Shown here: positions 1-20,824 of the stretch, piece by piece
Position numbering within the stretch: the first letter of the stretch is position 1
Layout: each line of letters begins with the position of its first letter
Assembly: GCF_000400465.1 (NCBI RefSeq)
Contig: NW_008806275.1
Span: 309,656-341,655 of the forward strand
Reading direction: 5' to 3'
Source of the DNA: Wallemia ichthyophaga EXF-994
Lineage: Eukaryota; Fungi; Basidiomycota
Length of the DNA stretch: 32,000 nucleotides
Translations under genes and position numbers: made by a program
The notes under the pieces: model-generated
Databases searched by the model: none
Told to the model about the DNA's origin: nothing
The model's input: only the letters and a program-made list of their open reading frames with translations

Positions 1-40
1 GATTCAGACCAAAATATTCTCTATATATCGAGTCTTCCTG

Positions 41-380
41 CTATAAAGACGAAACACGGGTTTCGTCGCGTGGCGCCCACAGCTCTAAAATCGGCTCCCG
101 AGAGAAAGTAAGATCATTTACATTCATCACACATCTATTGAAAACGATCAACGCAGAGAAAAAGGGGAATCAGCTCAACTCTGAAATCGGGGGTCTGGCT
201 CGAACAGGTGCATTTCAGTATTTGAAATAATGGGCATGGAAGGGTGAACAGGACTGCTTTGAATCGTTGAAATCAGGATAATAGGAATGTGTCCATATAT
301 ACCAAATACTTACCTGGACACATGTCACAACTGTATGGATGAGCACACATCGCTACGAAATTCTAGGTACGGCAAAATAA
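41..380. repeat. Dispersed noncoding repeat, copy A
   Basis: Collinear shared blocks with 21514-21865: CTATAAA plus hairpin, AACTCTGAAATCG (177-189), TGCATTTC, AATCGTTGAA (262-271), GATAATAGGA (277-286), TGGATGA, GTAC..GCAAA. Boundaries are approximate. Confidence 0.8.
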
Positions 381-663
381 CTACCGAACTCTCCAAAACC
401 GCATTCAGTTAATATTCATACTAAAATCGCTCTTGTTTGCAGTACTTAATAAACAAGTAAACGAGAAAGCTCAAGTTCTACGCGAGAAAAGTTTAAAGTC
501 TCCTTCAAATGAGCCCTTCTCACACTCTGGACACCGGCTAGAGTTGGCAGTATTTGTAGGTCTGCTGGGGCTATTGCGGCTACCTGTCGTGACAGCGGTA
601 CACTCAAATTGATAGTGTTTTAATAATTATACATGTCATCGGTTTGGAATCGTTAGGCATCGC

Positions 664-1527
664 TCAAGCATCCTTTGTGCTGTATTTGAGGAATTGTGGC
701 CTTTTGAGGGAGTTTAAAATGGAAATGGCGTTACAGAGGATGATTTTGTCTAGGTTCATGATGCGGTATGGGTGCTCGTCGGGTATCGCTTGTCTGCATT
801 CGGGACTGTCGCACAACCTGAGCCCGTCAATTATTCCATACGCATCAGGGTCATTGCAGTCAACCTTAAAAGTGCTTCGGTCTTGTCGTGTTGCCCAGCA
901 AGTTTTAAAAACGCTATGGCAGATGTTGCACCTCGTCGCGGTCTTGTAGCCGTTTATTTCGACGAGTTCGTAGCCAATTTTGCTAATTGCGCGCGGTACG
1001 TTTACGTCCTGAGTAGCGTGATTAATTTGGTTTTGATGTGACGATAAAAGAAAAACACCCACCTTGGCCCACGGAGGTTTGGTCTGGGGGGCAGAAGCGC
1101 TGTCATCATCCCCCACCCAAGCGAACACGAGTCGCTTGCCCTGCATCTTTGCCCTAGGGAGGTACTTGTTATAGCAGAGCCTGAGGGCATCAGCGAGCGC
1201 TTGGCGGGATATGTAGAGATACTTTTTGTCCATCCTTTTACAATCCCTGTTGTAGGCTTGTAGCGTGTAGTCACTGTCGTACGGACGTTTGGACAGGGCA
1301 TAGCTGACGTCCTCGCGCAACTGCTGCTGCTCATCTGCATACCTCTTATCGCCCGACCTGTGGGCATACTCTTTGTAAGTGTAGTGGAAGTAGTCGTAGC
1401 TTGCACGTGGATCGCCGTCTTGAGGGAGCGCATAAAGCAGATCGGCAATACCGCTTTTGAGGGCCACGAAATACCTTTTGCTGCGTTGGTATGGAGTGAG
1501 ATCGTAGAATTGGGTGATAGGGGTCAT
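664..1527 (-). CDS. Fanzor1/TnpB-like RuvC + zinc-finger protein, predicted nuclease-dead and N-terminally truncated
   Basis: Motifs occur in Fanzor1 order: FVALKSGIADLLY (RuvC-I, canonical V.IDPG..DLLY), YFHYTYKEY..RSG.KRY, KYLYISRQ, VFAWVGD, KIGYELVEINGYKTATRCNIC (canonical GY.V..IDEY.TS..C..C), GLRLCDSPEC, IMNLDKIILCNAISI (canonical NRD.NAA.NI), KRPQFL (canonical RP..L). Consensus motifs are recalled from family knowledge, not from a database search. Confidence 0.8.
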   Translation of the reverse strand: MTPITQFYDLTPYQRSKRYFVALKSGIADLLYALPQDGDPRASYDYFHYTYKEYAHRSGDKRYADEQQQLREDVSYALSKRPYDSDYTLQAYNRDCKRMDKKYLYISRQALADALRLCYNKYLPRAKMQGKRLVFAWVGDDDSASAPQTKPPWAKVGVFLLSSHQNQINHATQDVNVPRAISKIGYELVEINGYKTATRCNICHSVFKTCWATRQDRSTFKVDCNDPDAYGIIDGLRLCDSPECRQAIPDEHPYRIMNLDKIILCNAISILNSLKRPQFLKYSTKDA

Positions 1528-1842: not shown

Positions 1843-2076
1843 AGAAATATCGTATCGATTACGTACAGCGCTTACGAAGTTTAGATTCCGCAAACGATCT
1901 TGGCCTTTTTCGGACGAGACGCAGCAGCGAGCCAAGTAGCCAGGGGAGCAAGCCAGCAATGGTCAGCTCAGCAGCAGCATCTCAGCGCTGCGTGCCAAAT
2001 CCACCTTCCGGAAAGAGCAAAATAGTATCATCAGCTGACTCGGGTAGTTCCCGGGGCTACGTGTCGAGTATTTTTT
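1843..2076 (+). ncRNA. Candidate structured ncRNA, possibly SRP RNA-like
   Basis: Several stems are possible: 1855-1865 with 2058-2067, 1866-1872 with 1984-1990, and 1899-1904 with 1931-1936. CAGG-GGA-GCAA-GCC-AGCA at 1941-1958 resembles SRP helix 8. A T6 run lies at 2071-2076. There is no convincing ORF. An internal T5 at 1906-1910 argues against Pol III read-through. Confidence 0.35.
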
Positions 2077-2250
2077 GATGCGCGCATTCCGCTGTTGCTC
2101 CATAGCGTTGAGGTTTGTGAAGAGCGAGTACAGCGCAGCACCCACGCTAACGCATCCACAGCTAGTTTATGTTCTCGAGAGGACTCGTATCGATACACAA
2201 CGCACACGCCGGTGACCACACAGAAGTAGGATCAATAATAAAGCTCTAAA

Positions 2251-5163: not shown

Positions 5164-7544
5164 ATGGGAGATACGCAATTGAAGCTGAAAATTAATTTGA
5201 TTGGCCAGCAGTCAGTTGTGAGGAAATGCCTATTCAATTCAATACCCGAATATGATTATCTCAAGAGAGTTGTAAGTCTATTCACGGCATGTTGTTGAGA
5301 TCTGATAACGGCGATTAAGATTCGGAATCTATTCGAAATCGACAGCAATGTGGATATCGACATTTTCGACGTTAAATTGTCTGTTGTCGATAAAATTGGT
5401 TACCCCACTTTCAAAACGATCGACGAGTCTATCTGGAACTTAATCAAGAATGACCTCGTAAACCAGAAATCTGAAATGAAATGCAATCTCATTATACAAT
5501 ACTTGCACTACGCTACGATACCACAGCAGCAGGTGCAGCAGCAGCCACAACCACAACAACCACAACAACCACAGCCACCACCTGCTCAGCCTCAACAACA
5601 ACCACCACAACCACAACAGCCTCTCGACAGGAGAAACTCAAAGAAGCTCAAGAAGAATCAAAAAAACAGAGAAAGCAATCGTTTCTCCTTCCTAAATGTC
5701 TTAACTGCTGCAAAGGAGGCTCCGAGATCGGCATCAATTGATAATCTCAAGCAATACGACATCAATCACAATCCAGTTGAGCAAATTAGACAGTCTGAGA
5801 GTCTTATTCCGCCTTCTCAGCAGTTCCTCAGACCTCCTTCACCCTCACTTCCTCCGCAACCTCAACAAATCCCTTCACATCAATCTTTACCTCAATTAAA
5901 CTCTCAGTATTCAAACTCTTACCTCGGGCCTGATGTCAGCCAGCAACCGCTGACTCCTGCACCCCCTCTGCCCTCAAAATCTCCCTCCGCTCCCTGGTAC
6001 ACAAACCTTGACGCTCGTTTGGAAACAAAAAATGAACTCAAGTCTCTTATGGAGGGCTTTCTATCAAAACTCACCGGTACTATGAATTCTTTCGATCAAG
6101 ACGCTCACTTGGATGGTCTTGCCACCTTGGCAAAGTCTCAGACAGCTTTGGCTGTTCATGAAGCAGTTTGCGATGGCTGTGCTAATCGTATTCAAGGCGT
6201 AAGAATCAAGTGCACTACTTGCAGGGACTACGATTTGTGCGTTGGCTGTTTCTCCGTTGGCACACACGAACATGACACCTTCCATCGCATACGCGATCCT
6301 TCACAACCACTACCTGCTGTCCCAAAGGCAACTGATACAACAAAAACTCCTGTCCTCTCTTCAATACCAAGCCTGCACTCTTCAAACACAAAGCAAAACG
6401 TTCAGCACTCTGCTAGTTGTGACATGTGCAAGTCTAACATAGTAGGTACTCGTCATAAATGCACTATATGTCCTGATTACGTGAGTGCTCGTTAATCATG
6501 CGCATCATTCTCACACTCCCTCCCCAGGACGTCTGCGATAACTGCTTTGACCGTACACGCCTAGAGCATCCACTACACGAGTTTGCAGATCTCACAGATC
6601 CAAAGCTGATCAGAGTACCTGAGGAGTTGCAGACAGTACACCCAGGCGTTGTCTGCGATGGTTGTCAGAATGATGTTGTTGGATACAGGTTCAAGTGCAG
6701 CCACGCCGAATGTTTCGATCTCGATCTATGCGGTAACTGTGAATCCCATCCAATTGCGAAACACGACAAATCGCATATCATGCTGAAAATAAGACACCCA
6801 GTTATGCAACCTGAGGCTTTGAATCAAGCTTTTGCCGGTGGTATTAATCAAGAGTCGCTACCTTACGTCGATCAGCCACATCACACCAATGTCGAAAGGC
6901 AGAAGTCTGCAACAAATTTGACGACGATCAGTGAACGCTCCTTTGAAACTTCGAAACTTGATATGCACGGAACGCCTGAGTTTAATGTGCCTCCTTTGCA
7001 TGAAGCAATCAATCAAAATGACGTTACAAGCTACATAAAAGCTAATCACGACAATCCAAAGTCGAGGATAATCGAGAACTTTAACGGCGGTGAAGAGAAA
7101 GAGAAAGATTCAATTCTCAAGATGGCAGGTGGTACTCAGTTTAGTCATATCTTTGAATTCAATGGGTCGTCCAAGATATCAGCATCAAATCTATCGAGGC
7201 TGACACCACAAGCAATATTTGGAAACAGCCTAACGATATCCCAACCAAACCATCATCTTATAAGGGTTGATGGCTTCCGCGCACCTGAAGAAAGAGGAAT
7301 TCACTCAGAGACATGGTCATACATTGATAACATGATTGAAAAGACATTCAAGCTGGTGTTGTTTGTGGAAGATCTCATCAACGCGTCTGGAGATACATTG
7401 CCAAGCTCAGCGTTGATGATACCAGCAAAAGCCCAATCTTCGCAAGGAGCAAGTGAATTTAAGGATTATGAAACAGAATTTGGCACAGAATCTGCTAATG
7501 CTGCAGATGACTATGATTTTGAACTGGCTAAGAGGAATGCTTGA
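5164..7544 (+). CDS. NBR1-like selective-autophagy receptor: PB1-like N-terminus, Q/P-rich linker, three ZZ zinc fingers, degenerate FW/Ig-like domain
   Basis: Exons 5164-5271, 5320-6480 and 6528-7544 join in frame. N-terminus LKLKINLIGQQSVVRKCLF is PB1-like. ZZ fingers: CDGC..CTTC.DYDLC, CDMC..CTICPDYDVC, CDGC..CSHAECFDLDLC. GGTQFSHIF and PEERGIHSETW are FW-like. An alternative in-frame ATG lies at 5125. Confidence 0.75.
5524..5620 (+). repeat. CAA/CAG/CCA-rich low-complexity coding repeat (poly-Q/P)
   Basis: cagcagcaggtgcagcagcagccacaaccacaacaaccacaacaacc... encodes QQQVQQQPQPQQPQQPQPPP. Confidence 0.85.
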
Positions 7545-16521: not shown

Positions 16522-19500
16522 ATGGCTGATAACTCGAGGCCACCATTGAAGCACCTGTCTTCTTCTTTCAAGTCTGGTGATGACAGCGATCCCAATCTCA
16601 ATATCAACGATCAGCCCATCCTCGCTCCTACTGTCAGCTTTCAATACACCAACGATCAAGACCCTGAAGCTGCCTATAAAATACACACCGATTCAGCCTT
16701 CAAAAGGAAACGCTCCCTCGTCAAGCCTGAACGCGAACGCCCTGATCCCAACCACAGACTGTTTCACTATCGTAACAGAGCCGCACATCTAGATCAGTCT
16801 GGTCACGGTGGCGTTAAAGCTTCTTGTGAGCTCTGTTTCTCTTTCTCAATCACTTCCCTCTGACTTACACTTTCAGCCACCGGCGCTTACCCCCAGCAAT
16901 CCTCCTCTCCAGGCGTACGCCGAGGCAAATCCGTTCTAGGCAGACAAGACCCCGGTCCTGGTCTCTTGCGGAGGCAGACTAAAAAGTACAACTCTATTAT
17001 TGCTCCCGTCGAAGCTGAGAATGCCCCGACTGGAAAAGAACCCACGTCAACCTCCACCTTCGGCTACGCTTCTATACCTGGCCCAAAAGGTCCGTGGATG
17101 CTTTATTGCTTCATTATCACATGCTTCATTCCCAATTTCCTTCTCAAATTATGCGGTATCAACACTCCAGAGCGTCAAAGGGCTTGGCGTGAAAAAATTG
17201 GCTTGTTGGGTGTTATTGGTTGTTTGATGGCTTTAGTTGGTTTTATTACTTTCGGGTTCACTCAGACTGTTTGTGGTGTACCTCCTCATCGTTATCAAGT
17301 TGGTCACATCGATAATGGTAACCTCGTTGTGAACGGTATATCGTACAGTCTCAATACCTGGAAGCATCCTCAAGTTAATGGCTGGTTTGATAGTGATGAG
17401 AATTCAAACGTTCTCTTTAATGGTCCCATGCCTGCTTCTGGAATGGACGCCTCCTTTCTCTTTCAAAGAGTGAATGAAAACTGCAAAGATATCATTACTC
17501 CAGCAGATAATACTGGCATTGATCACTCCGGTAATGATATGTCATGGTATTTCCCTTGTCAACTTTTCAGCCCTAATGGGACAACCACCCCCAATCTTTC
17601 CAACTATACCGATGATACTCTTTGTCATACTTCTTCCACGGCTAGAGACGCTTTCGACTCCCTTGGTTCAAATGAAGATGTTACCACTGGTCAAATTTAC
17701 TTTACTTGGGATGATTTACGCGATCCAAACAGAAATTTAATCGTTTATGAGCAAGATGTTTTAGATTTAAGTTTGTTAAATTGGTTGGACAGTGCTCAAG
17801 TCAATTGGCCTTCGGAGTTTGATGAGTTAAAATCTCCCACACCGGAAGACAAGTTTAAAGGCAAAGATATAACGATGACAATGCAAAGAACTGGCAGAGA
17901 TGATATCGGTAAATGTCTGCGTGACATTGTTAGAGTTGGTTTCATCGATACTGACACTGTTGGATGTGTTGCTTCTAACGTGGTGTTATACTTATCTCTG
18001 ATATTTATTATCGGGGTTGTTTCGTATGTTTATTTACTGCGTTGTTTATCCTTCTGACAAATGATTTTAAGCATCAAATGGGCTATGGCGGTCTTCTTTG
18101 GTTGGTTCTTATCCTGGAGACTCGGTGTAGGATTCAAAGAAACAAGAGAAGAAAGACACGCGCGAATGAATGCCATTGAGAACTGGTCAGATGATATTTA
18201 CAAACCAGCTCCAAATAAATACAGGCCTTCAGCACCTCCTAACAACTCCAAATCCAATCCTTTTAGTAAAACTACAGCAAAGTTATTACCAAAGTCTAGC
18301 AGATTCACTCCTGCGCAAGAGAAACCAACATTCGTACCTGAGTTGAACAAACGCGCGAATAACTTTACTACATCAAATTCAAAAAGTTTTCTTGGCTCTT
18401 CAATCTATAGCCCTCCAGACTCTCCAAACATACGAGGCACACAAAGCTCAAGTAGTTTGCCATTCGCTAGCTCAAAAGAGTTTGTTGACTGGAACAGATC
18501 TTCGTCATTAGCTTCTGGCAGTTCAGGTGGATGTCCTTATCCTTTGGTTCAGAATGTTGTCCCACAACCACCATCAGACTATGAACCTCACAACTTCCCG
18601 TTAGCTCATACTATATGTCTAGTCACCGCTTATTCTGAAAGTGTTGAAGGTTTGAGAACTACTTTGGATTCCTTAGCTACGACAGATTATCCTAACAGTC
18701 ACAAGCTTCTGTTGATTATTGCAGATGGTATTGTCAAAGGATCTGGAAACGACATGTCGACACCAGACATATGTCTTAGTATGATGAAAGATTTGGTTTT
18801 ACCCAAGGATCAAGTTGAAGCCAACTCTTTTGTTTCAATAGCTGATGGACATAAAAGACACAACATGGCTAAAGTTTTTGCAGGATTTTACGATTATGAT
18901 GAGTCAACAGTCGAGCAAAACAAACAACAACGTGTACCGATTATTCTCGTCGCAAAAACTGGTAATCCACTTGAAGCTAAGGAGGCTAAACCTGGTAATC
19001 GTGGTAAACGTGATTCACAAGTATTGCTCATGTCTTTCCTTCAAAAAGTCATGTTCGACGAACGCATGACGACATTTGATTTCGATTTCTTTAACACTAT
19101 TTGGAGACTTACAGGTGTTTGTCCCGACAGATATGAAACTTGCTTGATGGTTGATGCTGATACGAAAGTTTTCCCTGATTCACTCACAAGAATGATGGCA
19201 TGTATGGTAGTCGATCCCGAAATCATGGGTTTATGTGGTGAAACTAAGATTGCAAACAAAGCACAAAGCTGGGTTACTATGATACAAGTATTTGAGTATC
19301 ACATTTCTCATCACTTGGCAAAGGCTTTCGAATCAGTTTTCGGTGGTGTTACTTGTTTACCTGGTTGCTTTTCTATGTACAGGATTAAGGCTCCAAAGGG
19401 TGGTCAAGGCTATTGGGTACCAGTTATCTGTAACCCGGATATTGTTGAGCACTACTCTGAAAACATCGTCGATACACTTCACAAGAAAAATTTACTGCTC

Positions 19501-20824
19501 CTCGGTGAAGATAGATTCTTGACAACGTTAATGCTTAGAACTTTACCAAAGCGCAAGATGATGTTCTGTCCACAAGCAGTTTGTAAAACTGTTGTACCGG
19601 ATGAGTTCAAGGTCTTATTATCACAAAGAAGGAGATGGATTAACTCAACCGTTCATAATCTGTTTGAGCTCATATTGGTTAGGGATTTATGCGGAACGTT
19701 TTGTTTCTCCATGCAATTCGTCGTCTTTATGGAAATGGTCGGTACGATGGTTTTACCAGCTGCTATTACGTTCACCGTTTACATCATTGTCCTCGGAATG
19801 TGGGTGAGGACTCATTAGATTTGCATTACTGACACTTTTTAGTATTCCATCTGAACGTACCCCAACGATCTCACTTATTTTGCTCTTGATCATTCTCGGT
19901 TTACCAGGTCTTCTTATTGTTCTGACATCGCGAAGACTAGCCTACGTTGGATGGATGATAATCTATCTTTTCTCGTTGCCAATATGGAACGCTATCTTAC
20001 CAGCTTACTCGTTCTGGCATTTTGATGACTTTTCGTGGGGTGCAACTAGACAAATTGAGGGTGAAGGTGCCGAAGAGTCGCACGGAGATAAAGAAGGAGA
20101 ATTTGATCCATCACATATCATTATGAAACGTTGGGCAGAATTCGAACGTGACAGAAGATATAGAACTGGTACAAACTCGAGAGATTCTACAGATGATGTC
20201 AGTAGATCTGCAAGGAGGCATGATTATAGAAGATCGGTGAACAGTAATCACGATGGTGGTGGGTTGACGTTGGATGCTTTGAGAAATCCGCCATCTTCAG
20301 CATCAAGAGGTAGTTTGACTGGACCTCCTCTAATTGAATTACCTCAACCACTTTCGACACATTTGAATGAAGCATCTGGTTCTACACCGCCACCCGTATC
20401 AAGAATTCCAGAAAATTTAGCAAATTTTGACGAATCAAGTGGAGCAAACAGTGTAGAACAGAAGCCAATGTTATCTTTGAGTCATATTGATTCACCTTTA
20501 CACGATCAAGATAGTCATCAAAGACTAGCTTCAATACCTCAAAGCGAGTTCTATCAACCACAAGCACAGTCAAATGAAAAGGAATCATTCTTAGAGGATA
20601 ACAGCCATCTCAACAGACCAGCACTCGGGATTACTCTAATGGATCAAGGGCCTATTGGCGAATCACCCCGAAGAGTAGTCAAACCAGCTCACAAAAGGAG
20701 ACAGCCAAGCTCGTCATTGGCGCTTGAACAATTGAATCAATATAGTCAACAAAGACGAGATGAAAGGGTGGGTAGCTCGGAGGATATTGATTTAGACGAA
20801 TCAACTCGTGCATCACAATCTTAA
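16522..20824 (+). CDS. Chitin synthase, division 2 class IV (Chs3-like), 3 introns
   Basis: [92 protein letters not shown] and HFDDFSWG. Confidence 0.95.

What the first reader, a model, noticed from the sequence alone, without database searches (positions are those of the whole stretch)
664..1527. Intact Fanzor-derived ORF with inactivated RuvC: candidate eukaryotic nuclease-dead RNA-guided protein
Seen: an open 287-codon frame keeps the Fanzor1 scaffold motifs, the four zinc ligands (C200, C203, C239, C244), D260, N266 and the terminal RP..L. The RuvC-I Asp position is Lys24 (AAA, 1456-1458) and the RuvC-II Glu position is Gly193 (GGC, 949-951). Each is two nucleotide changes from the canonical codon, and the Arg before D260 is Leu. 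Established: TnpB/Fanzor cleavage needs the RuvC D-E-D triad, and bacterial nuclease-dead TnpB derivatives (TldR) act as RNA-guided repressors. Inference: targeted loss of catalysis without stops or frameshifts, inside a housekeeping neighbourhood with no adjacent transposase, fits domestication better than random decay. The protein may act as an RNA-guided binder or another nucleic-acid-binding factor.
Basis: partly seen in the sequence, partly recalled or inferred. Interest (0 to 1): 0.92.

Follow-up and report, generated by a model that had tools for sequence, protein, structure and literature searches.

The report
Domesticated, nuclease-dead Fanzor1 fragment in Wallemia
A small single-copy gene next to INO1 in the salt-loving fungus Wallemia is the back half of a Fanzor1 RNA-guided nuclease, kept under selection with two of three catalytic residues replaced but without the front half needed for RNA-guided DNA targeting.

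Summary
Correction: 1009-1062 is an in-frame 54-nt intron, so the protein is 269 aa, identical to W. ichthyophaga EXF-994 J056_002121.

Fanzor1 descent is supported.
- An exhaustive profile search of 1.84 billion proteins found one non-Wallemia hit, a Fanzor1 RuvC half.
- hhalign gave 97.9% probability, E 4.5e-13, over 236 columns.
- A Fanzor1-only HMM scored the Wallemia proteins 38-46 bits against 5.9 or less for 900 shuffles.
- The structure model's best matches were SpuFz1 and PpFz.

SpuFz1 D383 is K/K/R and E541 is G/G/G in three Wallemia species. D606 and the four zinc cysteines are kept.

Domestication is supported. The gene is single-copy and sits beside INO1 in all three species, with a conserved intron position. 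Synonymous sites are saturated (pS 0.79-0.86) while pN is 0.21-0.30. No repeats or transposase are nearby.

The RNA-guided reading is not supported.
- The protein starts about 15 residues before RuvC-I and has no WED or REC lobe.
- No conserved or structured flanking RNA was found.
- Most well-conserved Fanzor1 nucleic-acid-contact positions are replaced.

Best reading: a genus-restricted exapted pseudo-nuclease. No domesticated Fanzor turned up in the searched literature.

The parts
664..1527 (-). Whole gene, ATG to TGA stop (664-666). Its 269-aa product is identical to W. ichthyophaga EXF-994 J056_002121 (P0101).
1063..1527 (-). Exon 1, codons 1-155. Holds the RuvC-I strands, the long helical insertion, and the strand at the canonical RuvC-II position.
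1009..1062 (-). Intron, 54 nt, GT...AG, in frame by chance. The position is conserved in W. mellicola (50 nt) and W. hederae (43 nt).
664..1008 (-). Exon 2, codons 156-269 plus the stop. Holds the relocated-Glu strand, the CCCC zinc ribbon, RuvC-III and the C-terminal 'KRPQFLKY' tail.
1456..1458 (-). K24 (AAA) at the RuvC-I catalytic Asp position (SpuFz1 D383). It is K, K and R in the three Wallemia species, and D in 72 of 77 Fanzor1 homologues.
1111..1113 (-). G139 in 'WVGDD', the canonical TnpB RuvC-II Glu position. It is already Gly in Fanzor1 ('GNW'/'GDW'), so this is the family state and not a new loss.
949..951 (-). It is G in all three Wallemia species, and E in 69 of 77 Fanzor1 homologues.
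766..942 (-). NUC/TNB zinc-ribbon region, residues about 178-236. The four Cys ligands are C182 (928-930), C185 (919-921), C221 (811-813) and C226 (796-798), conserved in all three species.
748..750 (-). The preceding Arg of 'WNRD' is Leu or Ile. N240 (=N604) and N248 (=N612, 730-732) are also retained.

Best explanation
The gene is a Fanzor1 (eukaryotic TnpB-superfamily) remnant exapted as a host gene in an ancestor of the genus Wallemia. Only the nuclease lobe survives: the RuvC RNase-H-like fold with its long helical insertion, plus the CCCC zinc ribbon. Two of the three metal-binding residues are replaced (Asp to Lys/Arg, Glu to Gly), so it is a pseudo-nuclease. Shown here: the homology, the substitutions, the missing N-terminal lobe, single-copy synteny and purifying selection. 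Inferred: it acts without catalysis, through the folded and still basic (pI about 9) RuvC/zinc-ribbon surface, as a nucleic-acid-binding or protein-docking factor. It does not act as a Fanzor-style RNA-guided DNA-targeting protein, because the TAM-reading and duplex-holding WED/REC lobe is absent and the omegaRNA-contact surface is largely remodelled. My confidence in the shown part is about 0.9. My confidence in the inferred mode of action is about 0.4-0.5.
For: Homology. A profile of three Wallemia sequences searched against 1.84 billion proteins found a single non-Wallemia hit, P0005, at whole-library E 7.4e-4. P0005 is a Fanzor1 RuvC half (PpFz E 1.3e-57, SpuFz1 E 3.7e-33). hhalign of the Wallemia profile against 77 Fanzor1 RuvC halves gave Prob 97.9, E 4.5e-13, 236 columns. 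A Fanzor1-only HMM scored the three Wallemia proteins 37.8-46.5 bits, against a maximum of 5.9 for 900 shuffles. Several Fanzor1 proteins from different clades hit only this gene by tblastn. The AF2 model (pLDDT 85.7) matched SpuFz1 best by Foldseek (E 1e-10, TMq 0.65), then PpFz and Cas12f.
Dead site. K/K/R at D383 and G/G/G at E541, with D606 kept.
Truncation. The alignment starts at residue 8 of 269. The start 'MT..QF(Y/F)DL' is conserved. The upstream intergenic DNA is 531-723 bp and shared with INO1. No Fanzor1 N-terminal half matches it.
Selection. pS 0.79-0.86, pN 0.21-0.30, intact frames and a conserved intron position in three species. INO1 is the divergent neighbour in all three.
No guide RNA evidence.
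Contact residues. R387, R420, N480, Q482, R572 and W603, all well conserved in Fanzor1, are replaced. Net charge is +9 to +13, against a Fanzor1 median of +22.
Against: No expression, localisation or binding data were available. The gene models rest on annotation plus comparative evidence for splicing. The protein evolves fast: 53-64% identity between species, where INO1 is 93-96%, so constraint is only moderate. Some SpuFz1 omegaRNA stem-loop-1 and linker contact positions are kept or stay basic (R414, R415, K483, R601, N604, L583, N612). In SpuFz1 the RuvC and NUC domains do supply much of the scaffold-binding surface, so RNA binding of some kind is not excluded. The good AF2 model depended on putting Fanzor1 sequences in the alignment; with Wallemia sequences alone pLDDT was 32.7, so the fold match is not independent of the sequence homology. 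Contact-residue mapping at about 20% identity is uncertain in loops.
Confidence: 0.6

Rival explanations
1. One reading: a nuclease-dead, RNA-guided DNA binder analogous to bacterial TldR. It would use a guide RNA, adjacent or encoded elsewhere, to bind complementary DNA, for example to regulate INO1 next door.
For: It descends from an RNA-guided nuclease and has a dead RuvC site. RuvC and NUC provide much of the omegaRNA scaffold interface in SpuFz1, and a few of those positions are retained. The protein is basic. The INO1 neighbourhood is conserved in three species.
Against: There is no WED or REC lobe, so no TAM reading, no unwinding wedge and no duplex channel. No Rfam hit in the window. 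No structure signal at the 3' end or downstream (z = +0.43). Nothing beyond the stop is conserved between species, and in W. mellicola the next gene ends 20 nt after it. The one strongly conserved intergenic block is a peptide-conserved INO1 uORF, not an RNA gene. Most well-conserved Fanzor1 contact residues are replaced.
Confidence: 0.1
2. A decaying Fanzor pseudogene or recent relic with no function, whose open frame survives by chance.
For: Catalytic substitutions also occur in obviously decaying multi-copy Fanzor1 genes, for example E to K or Q in the Rhizopus and Coemansia copies P0031, P0043 and P0060. The Wallemia protein evolves much faster than INO1.
Against: Synonymous sites are saturated, yet three species keep 267-269 codons without stops or frameshifts, with the same intron position, the same start, and pN only 0.21-0.30. 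The gene is single-copy and syntenic. It is present in every W. ichthyophaga and W. mellicola strain cluster listed.
Confidence: 0.03
3. Still a nuclease, DNA- or RNA-cleaving, using a re-wired active site such as D242 with the nearby acidic residues E172 and D141.
For: D242, N240 and N248 are retained. An invariant D141 lies next to the canonical RuvC-II position, and E172 lies three residues before G175. The family has moved its catalytic Glu once before.
Against: The RuvC-I Asp is replaced by Lys or Arg in all three species. In SpuFz1, D383 is one of the residues that coordinate the two Mg ions, and mutating the matching Asp in ApmFz abolishes cleavage (D324A). From general knowledge of RNase-H-fold enzymes, a cationic side chain there would occupy the metal site.
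Confidence: 0.05
4. A transposon-control factor: a truncated, dead Fanzor lobe kept as a dominant-negative decoy that soaks up omegaRNAs or poisons incoming Fanzor1 elements, like truncated transposase repressors.
For: The architecture (the RNA-scaffold-binding lobe only, catalytically dead) is what such a decoy would look like. No typical Fanzor1 from Wallemia or any basidiomycete appeared among the homologues.
Against: The omegaRNA-contact surface is poorly conserved. With no resident Fanzor1 elements detected there is no obvious current target. This is purely speculative.
Confidence: 0.07

Closest known systems
Fanzor1 RNA-guided endonucleases (SpuFz1, PDB 8GKH; PpFz, PDB 9CF0)
   Same: Homologous RuvC fold with the same order of motifs, including the family-specific Gly at the canonical RuvC-II position, the 'xxTSxxC' strand, the CCCC zinc ribbon, the 'N-x-D...N' RuvC-III helix and the C-terminal 'RP..F' tail.
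   Different: It covers only about the last 42% of a Fanzor1 and has no WED or REC. D383 and E541 equivalents are replaced. It is single-copy and syntenic, with no inverted repeats and no detectable omegaRNA. The host is a basidiomycete, whereas all 95 sequence relatives of the bridging Fanzor1 with a named source came from Mucoromycota, Zoopagomycota or chytrids.
TldR (TnpB-like nuclease-dead repressors, bacteria)
   Same: A TnpB-superfamily nuclease exapted from a transposon, with the RuvC active site inactivated and kept under host selection (PMC10705468; PMC13565253).
   Different: TldRs keep the WED/REC lobe and an adjacent guide RNA and lose RuvC/C-terminal parts. The Wallemia protein keeps RuvC and the zinc ribbon and loses the WED/REC lobe, and no guide RNA was found. 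It is eukaryotic.
Nuclease-inactive Cas12 derivatives (Cas12k, Cas12c/Cas12m, exapted Cas12f homologues)
   Same: RuvC-fold proteins that lost DNA cleavage and were reused for binding-based functions (PMC13472631 listed).
   Different: All of those remain full-length RNA-guided effectors with REC/WED lobes and CRISPR or guide RNAs. This one is a lone nuclease lobe.
Domesticated eukaryotic transposon proteins in general (for example PGBD5)
   Same: A single-copy, syntenic, selected host gene derived from a mobile-element protein (PMC12324416 abstract).
   Different: The source here is the accessory RNA-guided nuclease, not a transposase. I found no report of a domesticated Fanzor in the searched library.

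Membership tests
Fanzor1 / TnpB superfamily (by descent) | Significant sequence and profile homology of the RuvC region to Fanzor1 | tested here: met
   Whole-library E 7.4e-4 to a Fanzor1. hhalign Prob 97.9, E 4.5e-13. Reciprocal HMM 38-46 bits against 5.9 or less for shuffles.
Fanzor1 / TnpB superfamily (by descent) | RuvC (RNase-H-like) fold with an inserted zinc ribbon | tested here: met
   AF2 pLDDT 85.7. The six best Foldseek hits are SpuFz and PpFz entries (E 1e-10 to 5e-8), followed by Cas12f. Caveat: the model's alignment contained Fanzor1 sequences.
Fanzor1 as an active RNA-guided nuclease | Catalytic triad D383 / E541 / D606 (SpuFz1 numbering) | tested here: not met
   K/K/R, G/G/G and D/D/D in three species.
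Fanzor1 as an active RNA-guided nuclease | CCCC zinc finger in the NUC/TNB domain | tested here: met
   C182, C185, C221 and C226 are conserved in all three species. The Pfam TNB model itself gave no hit.
Fanzor1 as an active RNA-guided nuclease | N-terminal WED and REC domains (TAM recognition, unwinding, heteroduplex channel) | tested here: not met
   The protein begins about 15 residues before RuvC-I. No upstream coding capacity and no tblastn match of Fanzor1 N-terminal halves in the window, L001, L002 or L007.
Fanzor1 as an active RNA-guided nuclease | omegaRNA encoded at or beyond the 3' end of the ORF | tested here: inconclusive
   No Rfam hit. No fold signal (z +0.43). No interspecies conservation past the stop. 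A trans-encoded RNA cannot be excluded without the whole genome and RNA data.
Fanzor1 as a mobile element | Terminal inverted repeats, multiple copies, associated transposase | tested here: not met
   No meaningful repeats. One orthologue per species. Neighbours are housekeeping genes.
TldR-like RNA-guided repressors | Nuclease-dead RuvC | tested here: met
TldR-like RNA-guided repressors | Retained WED/REC guide- and target-binding lobe | tested here: not met
TldR-like RNA-guided repressors | Adjacent guide RNA with a conserved scaffold, and a target match in a promoter | tested here: inconclusive
   None found in the flanks. The conserved intergenic block is an INO1 uORF. Target matching cannot be tested without a guide.
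Domesticated (exapted) transposon-derived host gene | Single copy, orthologous synteny across species, purifying selection, loss of mobility hallmarks | tested here: met
Domesticated (exapted) transposon-derived host gene | Expression and a host phenotype | not testable with these tools
   No RNA-seq or genetics available here.

The most novel reading that the evidence does not exclude
This would be the first exapted Fanzor in a eukaryote that still works with RNA. The lone, dead RuvC/zinc-ribbon lobe would retain binding to a trans-encoded omegaRNA-like RNA (the RuvC and NUC domains carry the stem-loop-1 interface in SpuFz1). It would use it for RNA-guided or RNA-dependent regulation, alone or with a still unidentified partner that replaces WED/REC.
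Probability: 0.1. Interest if true: 0.9.

Novelty: new variant of a known kind. Interest (0 to 1): 0.6.

Why it matters
Exaptation of TnpB-family nucleases is documented in prokaryotes (Cas12, TldR, dead Cas12f homologues). For the eukaryotic branch, Fanzor, I found no domesticated example in the searched literature, and a 2026 review of the OMEGA system lists only Cas12 and TldRs. This gene gives a concrete and tractable case. It is 269 aa, single-copy and selected across a fungal genus, with the active site specifically disabled. Its architecture is the reverse of TldR: the nuclease lobe is kept and the guide/target lobe is lost. That raises the question of what a free RuvC/zinc-ribbon lobe is good for. 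It also shows that Fanzor1 once reached the Basidiomycota, where no typical copies appeared in these searches. The limits are clear: the function is unknown, the family is restricted to one small genus, and the attractive RNA-guided reading is unlikely.

Tried and rejected
- Direct searches with the single protein found nothing relevant: Pfam, NCBIfam and PDB phmmer, a three-sequence profile against PDB, and Pfam again on the spliced protein. The homology is visible only through an intermediate sequence and profile-profile comparison.
- AF2 with the three-sequence Wallemia alignment failed (pLDDT 32.7), so I ran no Foldseek on that model.
- Search for a guide RNA: Rfam on the whole window gave none. 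Folding the ORF 3' end plus 220 nt downstream gave z +0.43. blastn of the flanks against W. mellicola and W. hederae showed conservation stopping at the stop codon.
- The strongly conserved 95-nt block in the shared intergenic region looked like an RNA candidate. It is a peptide-conserved uORF abutting the INO1 start.
- Terminal repeats: only two weak 16-nt inverted pairs, judged chance.
- Lower synonymous divergence in the last 29 codons (pS 0.55 in two of three pairs, 0.75 in the third) is not consistent enough to claim an overlapping RNA element.
- dN/dS as a ratio could not be computed between species because pS exceeds the Jukes-Cantor limit. I report pN and pS, with pN/pS of 0.28-0.39 as an upper bound. 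The single within-species comparison has only 2 synonymous and 2 non-synonymous differences.
- I ran no further search on Fanzor1 N-terminal halves. Its word-index sensitivity would make a negative result weak.

Full report
**1. What is in the sequence**

The minus-strand ORF 664..1527 is real, with 287 sense codons and a TGA stop.
- K24 AAA at 1456-1458
- G193 GGC at 949-951
- C200, C203, C239, C244
- L259, D260, N266

One correction is needed. The stretch 1009-1062 (GTGGGT...CTCAG, 54 nt) is an intron that happens to be a multiple of three.
- NCBI models of the gene are 269 aa.
- The window's spliced product is identical to W. ichthyophaga EXF-994 J056_002121 (P0101).
- At the same codon position W. 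mellicola has a 50-nt GT..AG segment and W. hederae a 43-nt one. Read-through runs into a stop on the W. hederae-type contig L003.

**2. Organism and orthologues**

The window is from Wallemia ichthyophaga, a halophilic basidiomycete.
- The word-indexed search of 5.8 billion proteins returned only Wallemia sequences.
- Cluster look-ups show the gene in many W. ichthyophaga and W. mellicola strains and in W. hederae (267 aa, P0114).
- In all three species it lies head-to-head with INO1. The wider block ZZ-finger gene, small ORF, INO1, this gene is shared.
- In W. mellicola and W. hederae the downstream neighbour is a convergent methyltransferase, which is absent from window 1-663.

**3. Is it Fanzor-derived?**

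Direct searches fail: Pfam, NCBIfam, PDB phmmer, and a three-sequence profile against PDB. Four further lines of evidence then agree.
- **Exhaustive search.** An hmmsearch of 1.84 billion representative proteins with the three-sequence Wallemia profile found exactly one non-Wallemia protein, P0005. The whole-library E-value was 7.4e-4, aligned over query 17-255. P0005 is unmistakably the RuvC half of a Fanzor1: E 1.3e-57 to Parasitella PpFz (9CF0) and 3.7e-33 to SpuFz1 (8GKH).
- **Profile against profile.** P0005 has 95 relatives; every one that carries an organism name is from Mucoromycota, Zoopagomycota or chytrids. hhalign of the Wallemia alignment against 77 of their RuvC halves gave probability 97.9%, E 4.5e-13, over 236 columns (Wallemia residues 8-265).
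- **Reciprocal test.** An HMM built only from those 77 Fanzor1 sequences scored the three Wallemia proteins 37.8-46.5 bits. The maximum for 900 shuffled versions was 5.9 bits. Fanzor1 proteins from several clades hit this gene, and nothing else in the window, by tblastn.
- **Structure.** With Fanzor1 sequences in the alignment, AlphaFold2 gave a confident model (pLDDT 85.7, pTM 0.77). Its best PDB matches were SpuFz1 (E 1e-10, TMq 0.65), PpFz, then Cas12f and GtFz.

The fold match is not independent of the sequence evidence. The Wallemia-only alignment gave pLDDT 32.7.

**4. The active site**

I rebuilt SpuFz1 residues 321-633 from the alignment printed. All 31 residues named in Saito et al. 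2023 (PMC10432273) then fell on the right letters. In SpuFz1, two Mg ions are held by D383, N385, E541 and D606.

| SpuFz1 residue | Role | W. ichthyophaga / W. mellicola / W. hederae | In 77 Fanzor1 homologues |
|---|---|---|---|
| D383 | RuvC-I Asp | K / K / R | D in 72 |
| E541 | relocated Glu | G / G / G | E in 69 |
| D606 | RuvC-III Asp | D / D / D | D in 73 |

- The Arg before D606 is Leu, Ile and Leu in the same species order.
- The Gly at the canonical TnpB RuvC-II position ('WVGDD') is the normal Fanzor state (PMC10530073). It is not a new loss.
- The four zinc cysteines are conserved.

The losses predate the split of the three species.

**5. What is missing**

- The protein starts about 15 residues before RuvC-I. 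That corresponds to roughly SpuFz1 residues 366-633 of 638.
- The start 'MT..QF(Y/F)DL' is conserved.
- Upstream there are only 531-723 bp before INO1. Apart from INO1-proximal blocks, this DNA is unalignable between species.
- No Fanzor1 N-terminal half matches the window or the orthologous loci.

In SpuFz1 the WED and REC domains read the TAM, begin unwinding and form the heteroduplex channel with RuvC. The RuvC and NUC domains carry much of the omegaRNA scaffold interface.

I mapped those nucleic-acid-contact residues onto the Wallemia proteins.
- **Replaced:** R387 to A/V, R407 to Y/H, R420 to Q/T, K440 to D/E, N480 to P, Q482 to A/S, K562 to W, W570 to T/K/N, R572 to V/T/A, W603 to M/L. 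Of these, R387, R420, N480, Q482, R572 and W603 are well conserved across Fanzor1.
- **Kept or still basic:** R414, R415, K483, R601, N604, L583, N612.

Net charge is +9 to +13 (pI 9.0-9.4), against a median of +22 for the same region of Fanzor1.

**6. Guide RNA**

- Rfam finds nothing in the window.
- The ORF 3' end plus downstream DNA folds no better than shuffles (z +0.43).
- Interspecies conservation stops at the stop codon. In W. mellicola the next gene ends 20 nt later.
- There are no terminal repeats.
- The one strongly conserved non-coding block, next to INO1, is a peptide-conserved uORF.

**7. Selection**

- Between species pS is 0.79-0.86, which is saturated, while pN is 0.21-0.30. 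So pN/pS of 0.28-0.39 is an upper bound on omega.
- All three species keep intact frames, the same start and the same intron position.
- Amino-acid identity is 53-64%, against 93-96% for INO1. Constraint is real but moderate.
- Random decay is seen in some multi-copy Rhizopus and Coemansia Fanzor1 genes. It does not explain a single-copy syntenic gene of this age.

**8. Interpretation**

Shown:
- This is a Fanzor1 nuclease lobe (RuvC plus zinc ribbon).
- It is catalytically disabled.
- It is fixed as a host gene in Wallemia.

Inferred: it acts without catalysis, as a nucleic-acid-binding or docking module. It does not act as a Fanzor- or TldR-type RNA-guided DNA binder, because the lobe that makes targeting possible is gone and the RNA-contact surface is remodelled.

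Rivals considered, with my estimated probability:
- TldR-like RNA guidance: about 0.1
- A decoy against Fanzor elements: about 0.07
- A re-wired nuclease: about 0.05
- A functionless relic: about 0.03

**9. Novelty**

No paper in the searched library links Fanzor with Wallemia or Basidiomycota, names these locus tags, or describes a domesticated Fanzor. A 2026 OMEGA review lists only Cas12 and TldRs as domesticated forms.

I rate this a new variant of a known kind: an exapted, nuclease-dead TnpB-superfamily protein. It is new in being eukaryotic and in keeping the opposite half of the protein from TldR.

Noticed in passing
window 2169-2249 (+): A 26-codon upstream ORF (MFSRGLVSIHNAHAGDHTEVGSIIKL*) ends 1 nt before the INO1 ATG at 2251. 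The peptide is conserved in W. hederae and W. mellicola with synonymous codon changes, although synonymous sites elsewhere are saturated. This suggests a conserved-peptide uORF regulating INO1 translation.
   Followed up: partly
window 2040-2108 (INO1 upstream region): Short blocks are conserved in all three Wallemia species in otherwise unalignable intergenic DNA: reverse complements of GGAACTACCCGA (2040-2051), GACACGTAGC (2056-2065, with an E-box-like CACGT core), GCGCGC (2080-2085) and ACGCTATGGAG (2098-2108). They are likely INO1 promoter elements.
   Followed up: no
window 1-663; L002 3865-4951: The downstream neighbour differs from the other species: the convergent methyltransferase of W. 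mellicola and W. hederae is not there. In at least five W. ichthyophaga annotation prefixes the gene carries locus tag _00001, i.e. it is the first gene on its contig. Assemblies therefore seem to break about 0.7-1.1 kb beyond it, which suggests a rearrangement or a repeat-rich or chromosome-end region.
   Followed up: partly
window 1009-1062 (-): The intron is in frame and free of stops in W. ichthyophaga only. Automatic ORF callers therefore produce a 287-aa read-through protein (P0106 from Logan assemblies) alongside the 269-aa annotated one.
   Followed up: yes
L006 1147-2755: The bridging Fanzor1 (P0005, from Logan run ERR10900016, organism unknown) is called as two overlapping ORFs (1147-1821 and 1769-2755). 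Its N-terminal half is probably separated by a frameshift or an unrecognised intron.
   Followed up: no
Fanzor1 homologues P0031, P0043, P0060 (alignment A2): Some Rhizopus and Coemansia Fanzor1 copies carry substitutions at the relocated Glu ('LLDKFRTS', 'LLDQLRAS', 'LLDKNRTS'). P0060 also has RuvC-III 'WDQD'. These look like ordinary decay in multi-copy elements and make a useful contrast with the Wallemia gene.
   Followed up: no
window 16966-20824 (+) and 5350-7544 (+): A class IV/V-type chitin synthase (CHS4-like domain plus Chitin_synth_2) and a ZZ-finger protein are each split over adjacent ORFs, presumably by introns. This is ordinary fungal gene structure.
   Followed up: no
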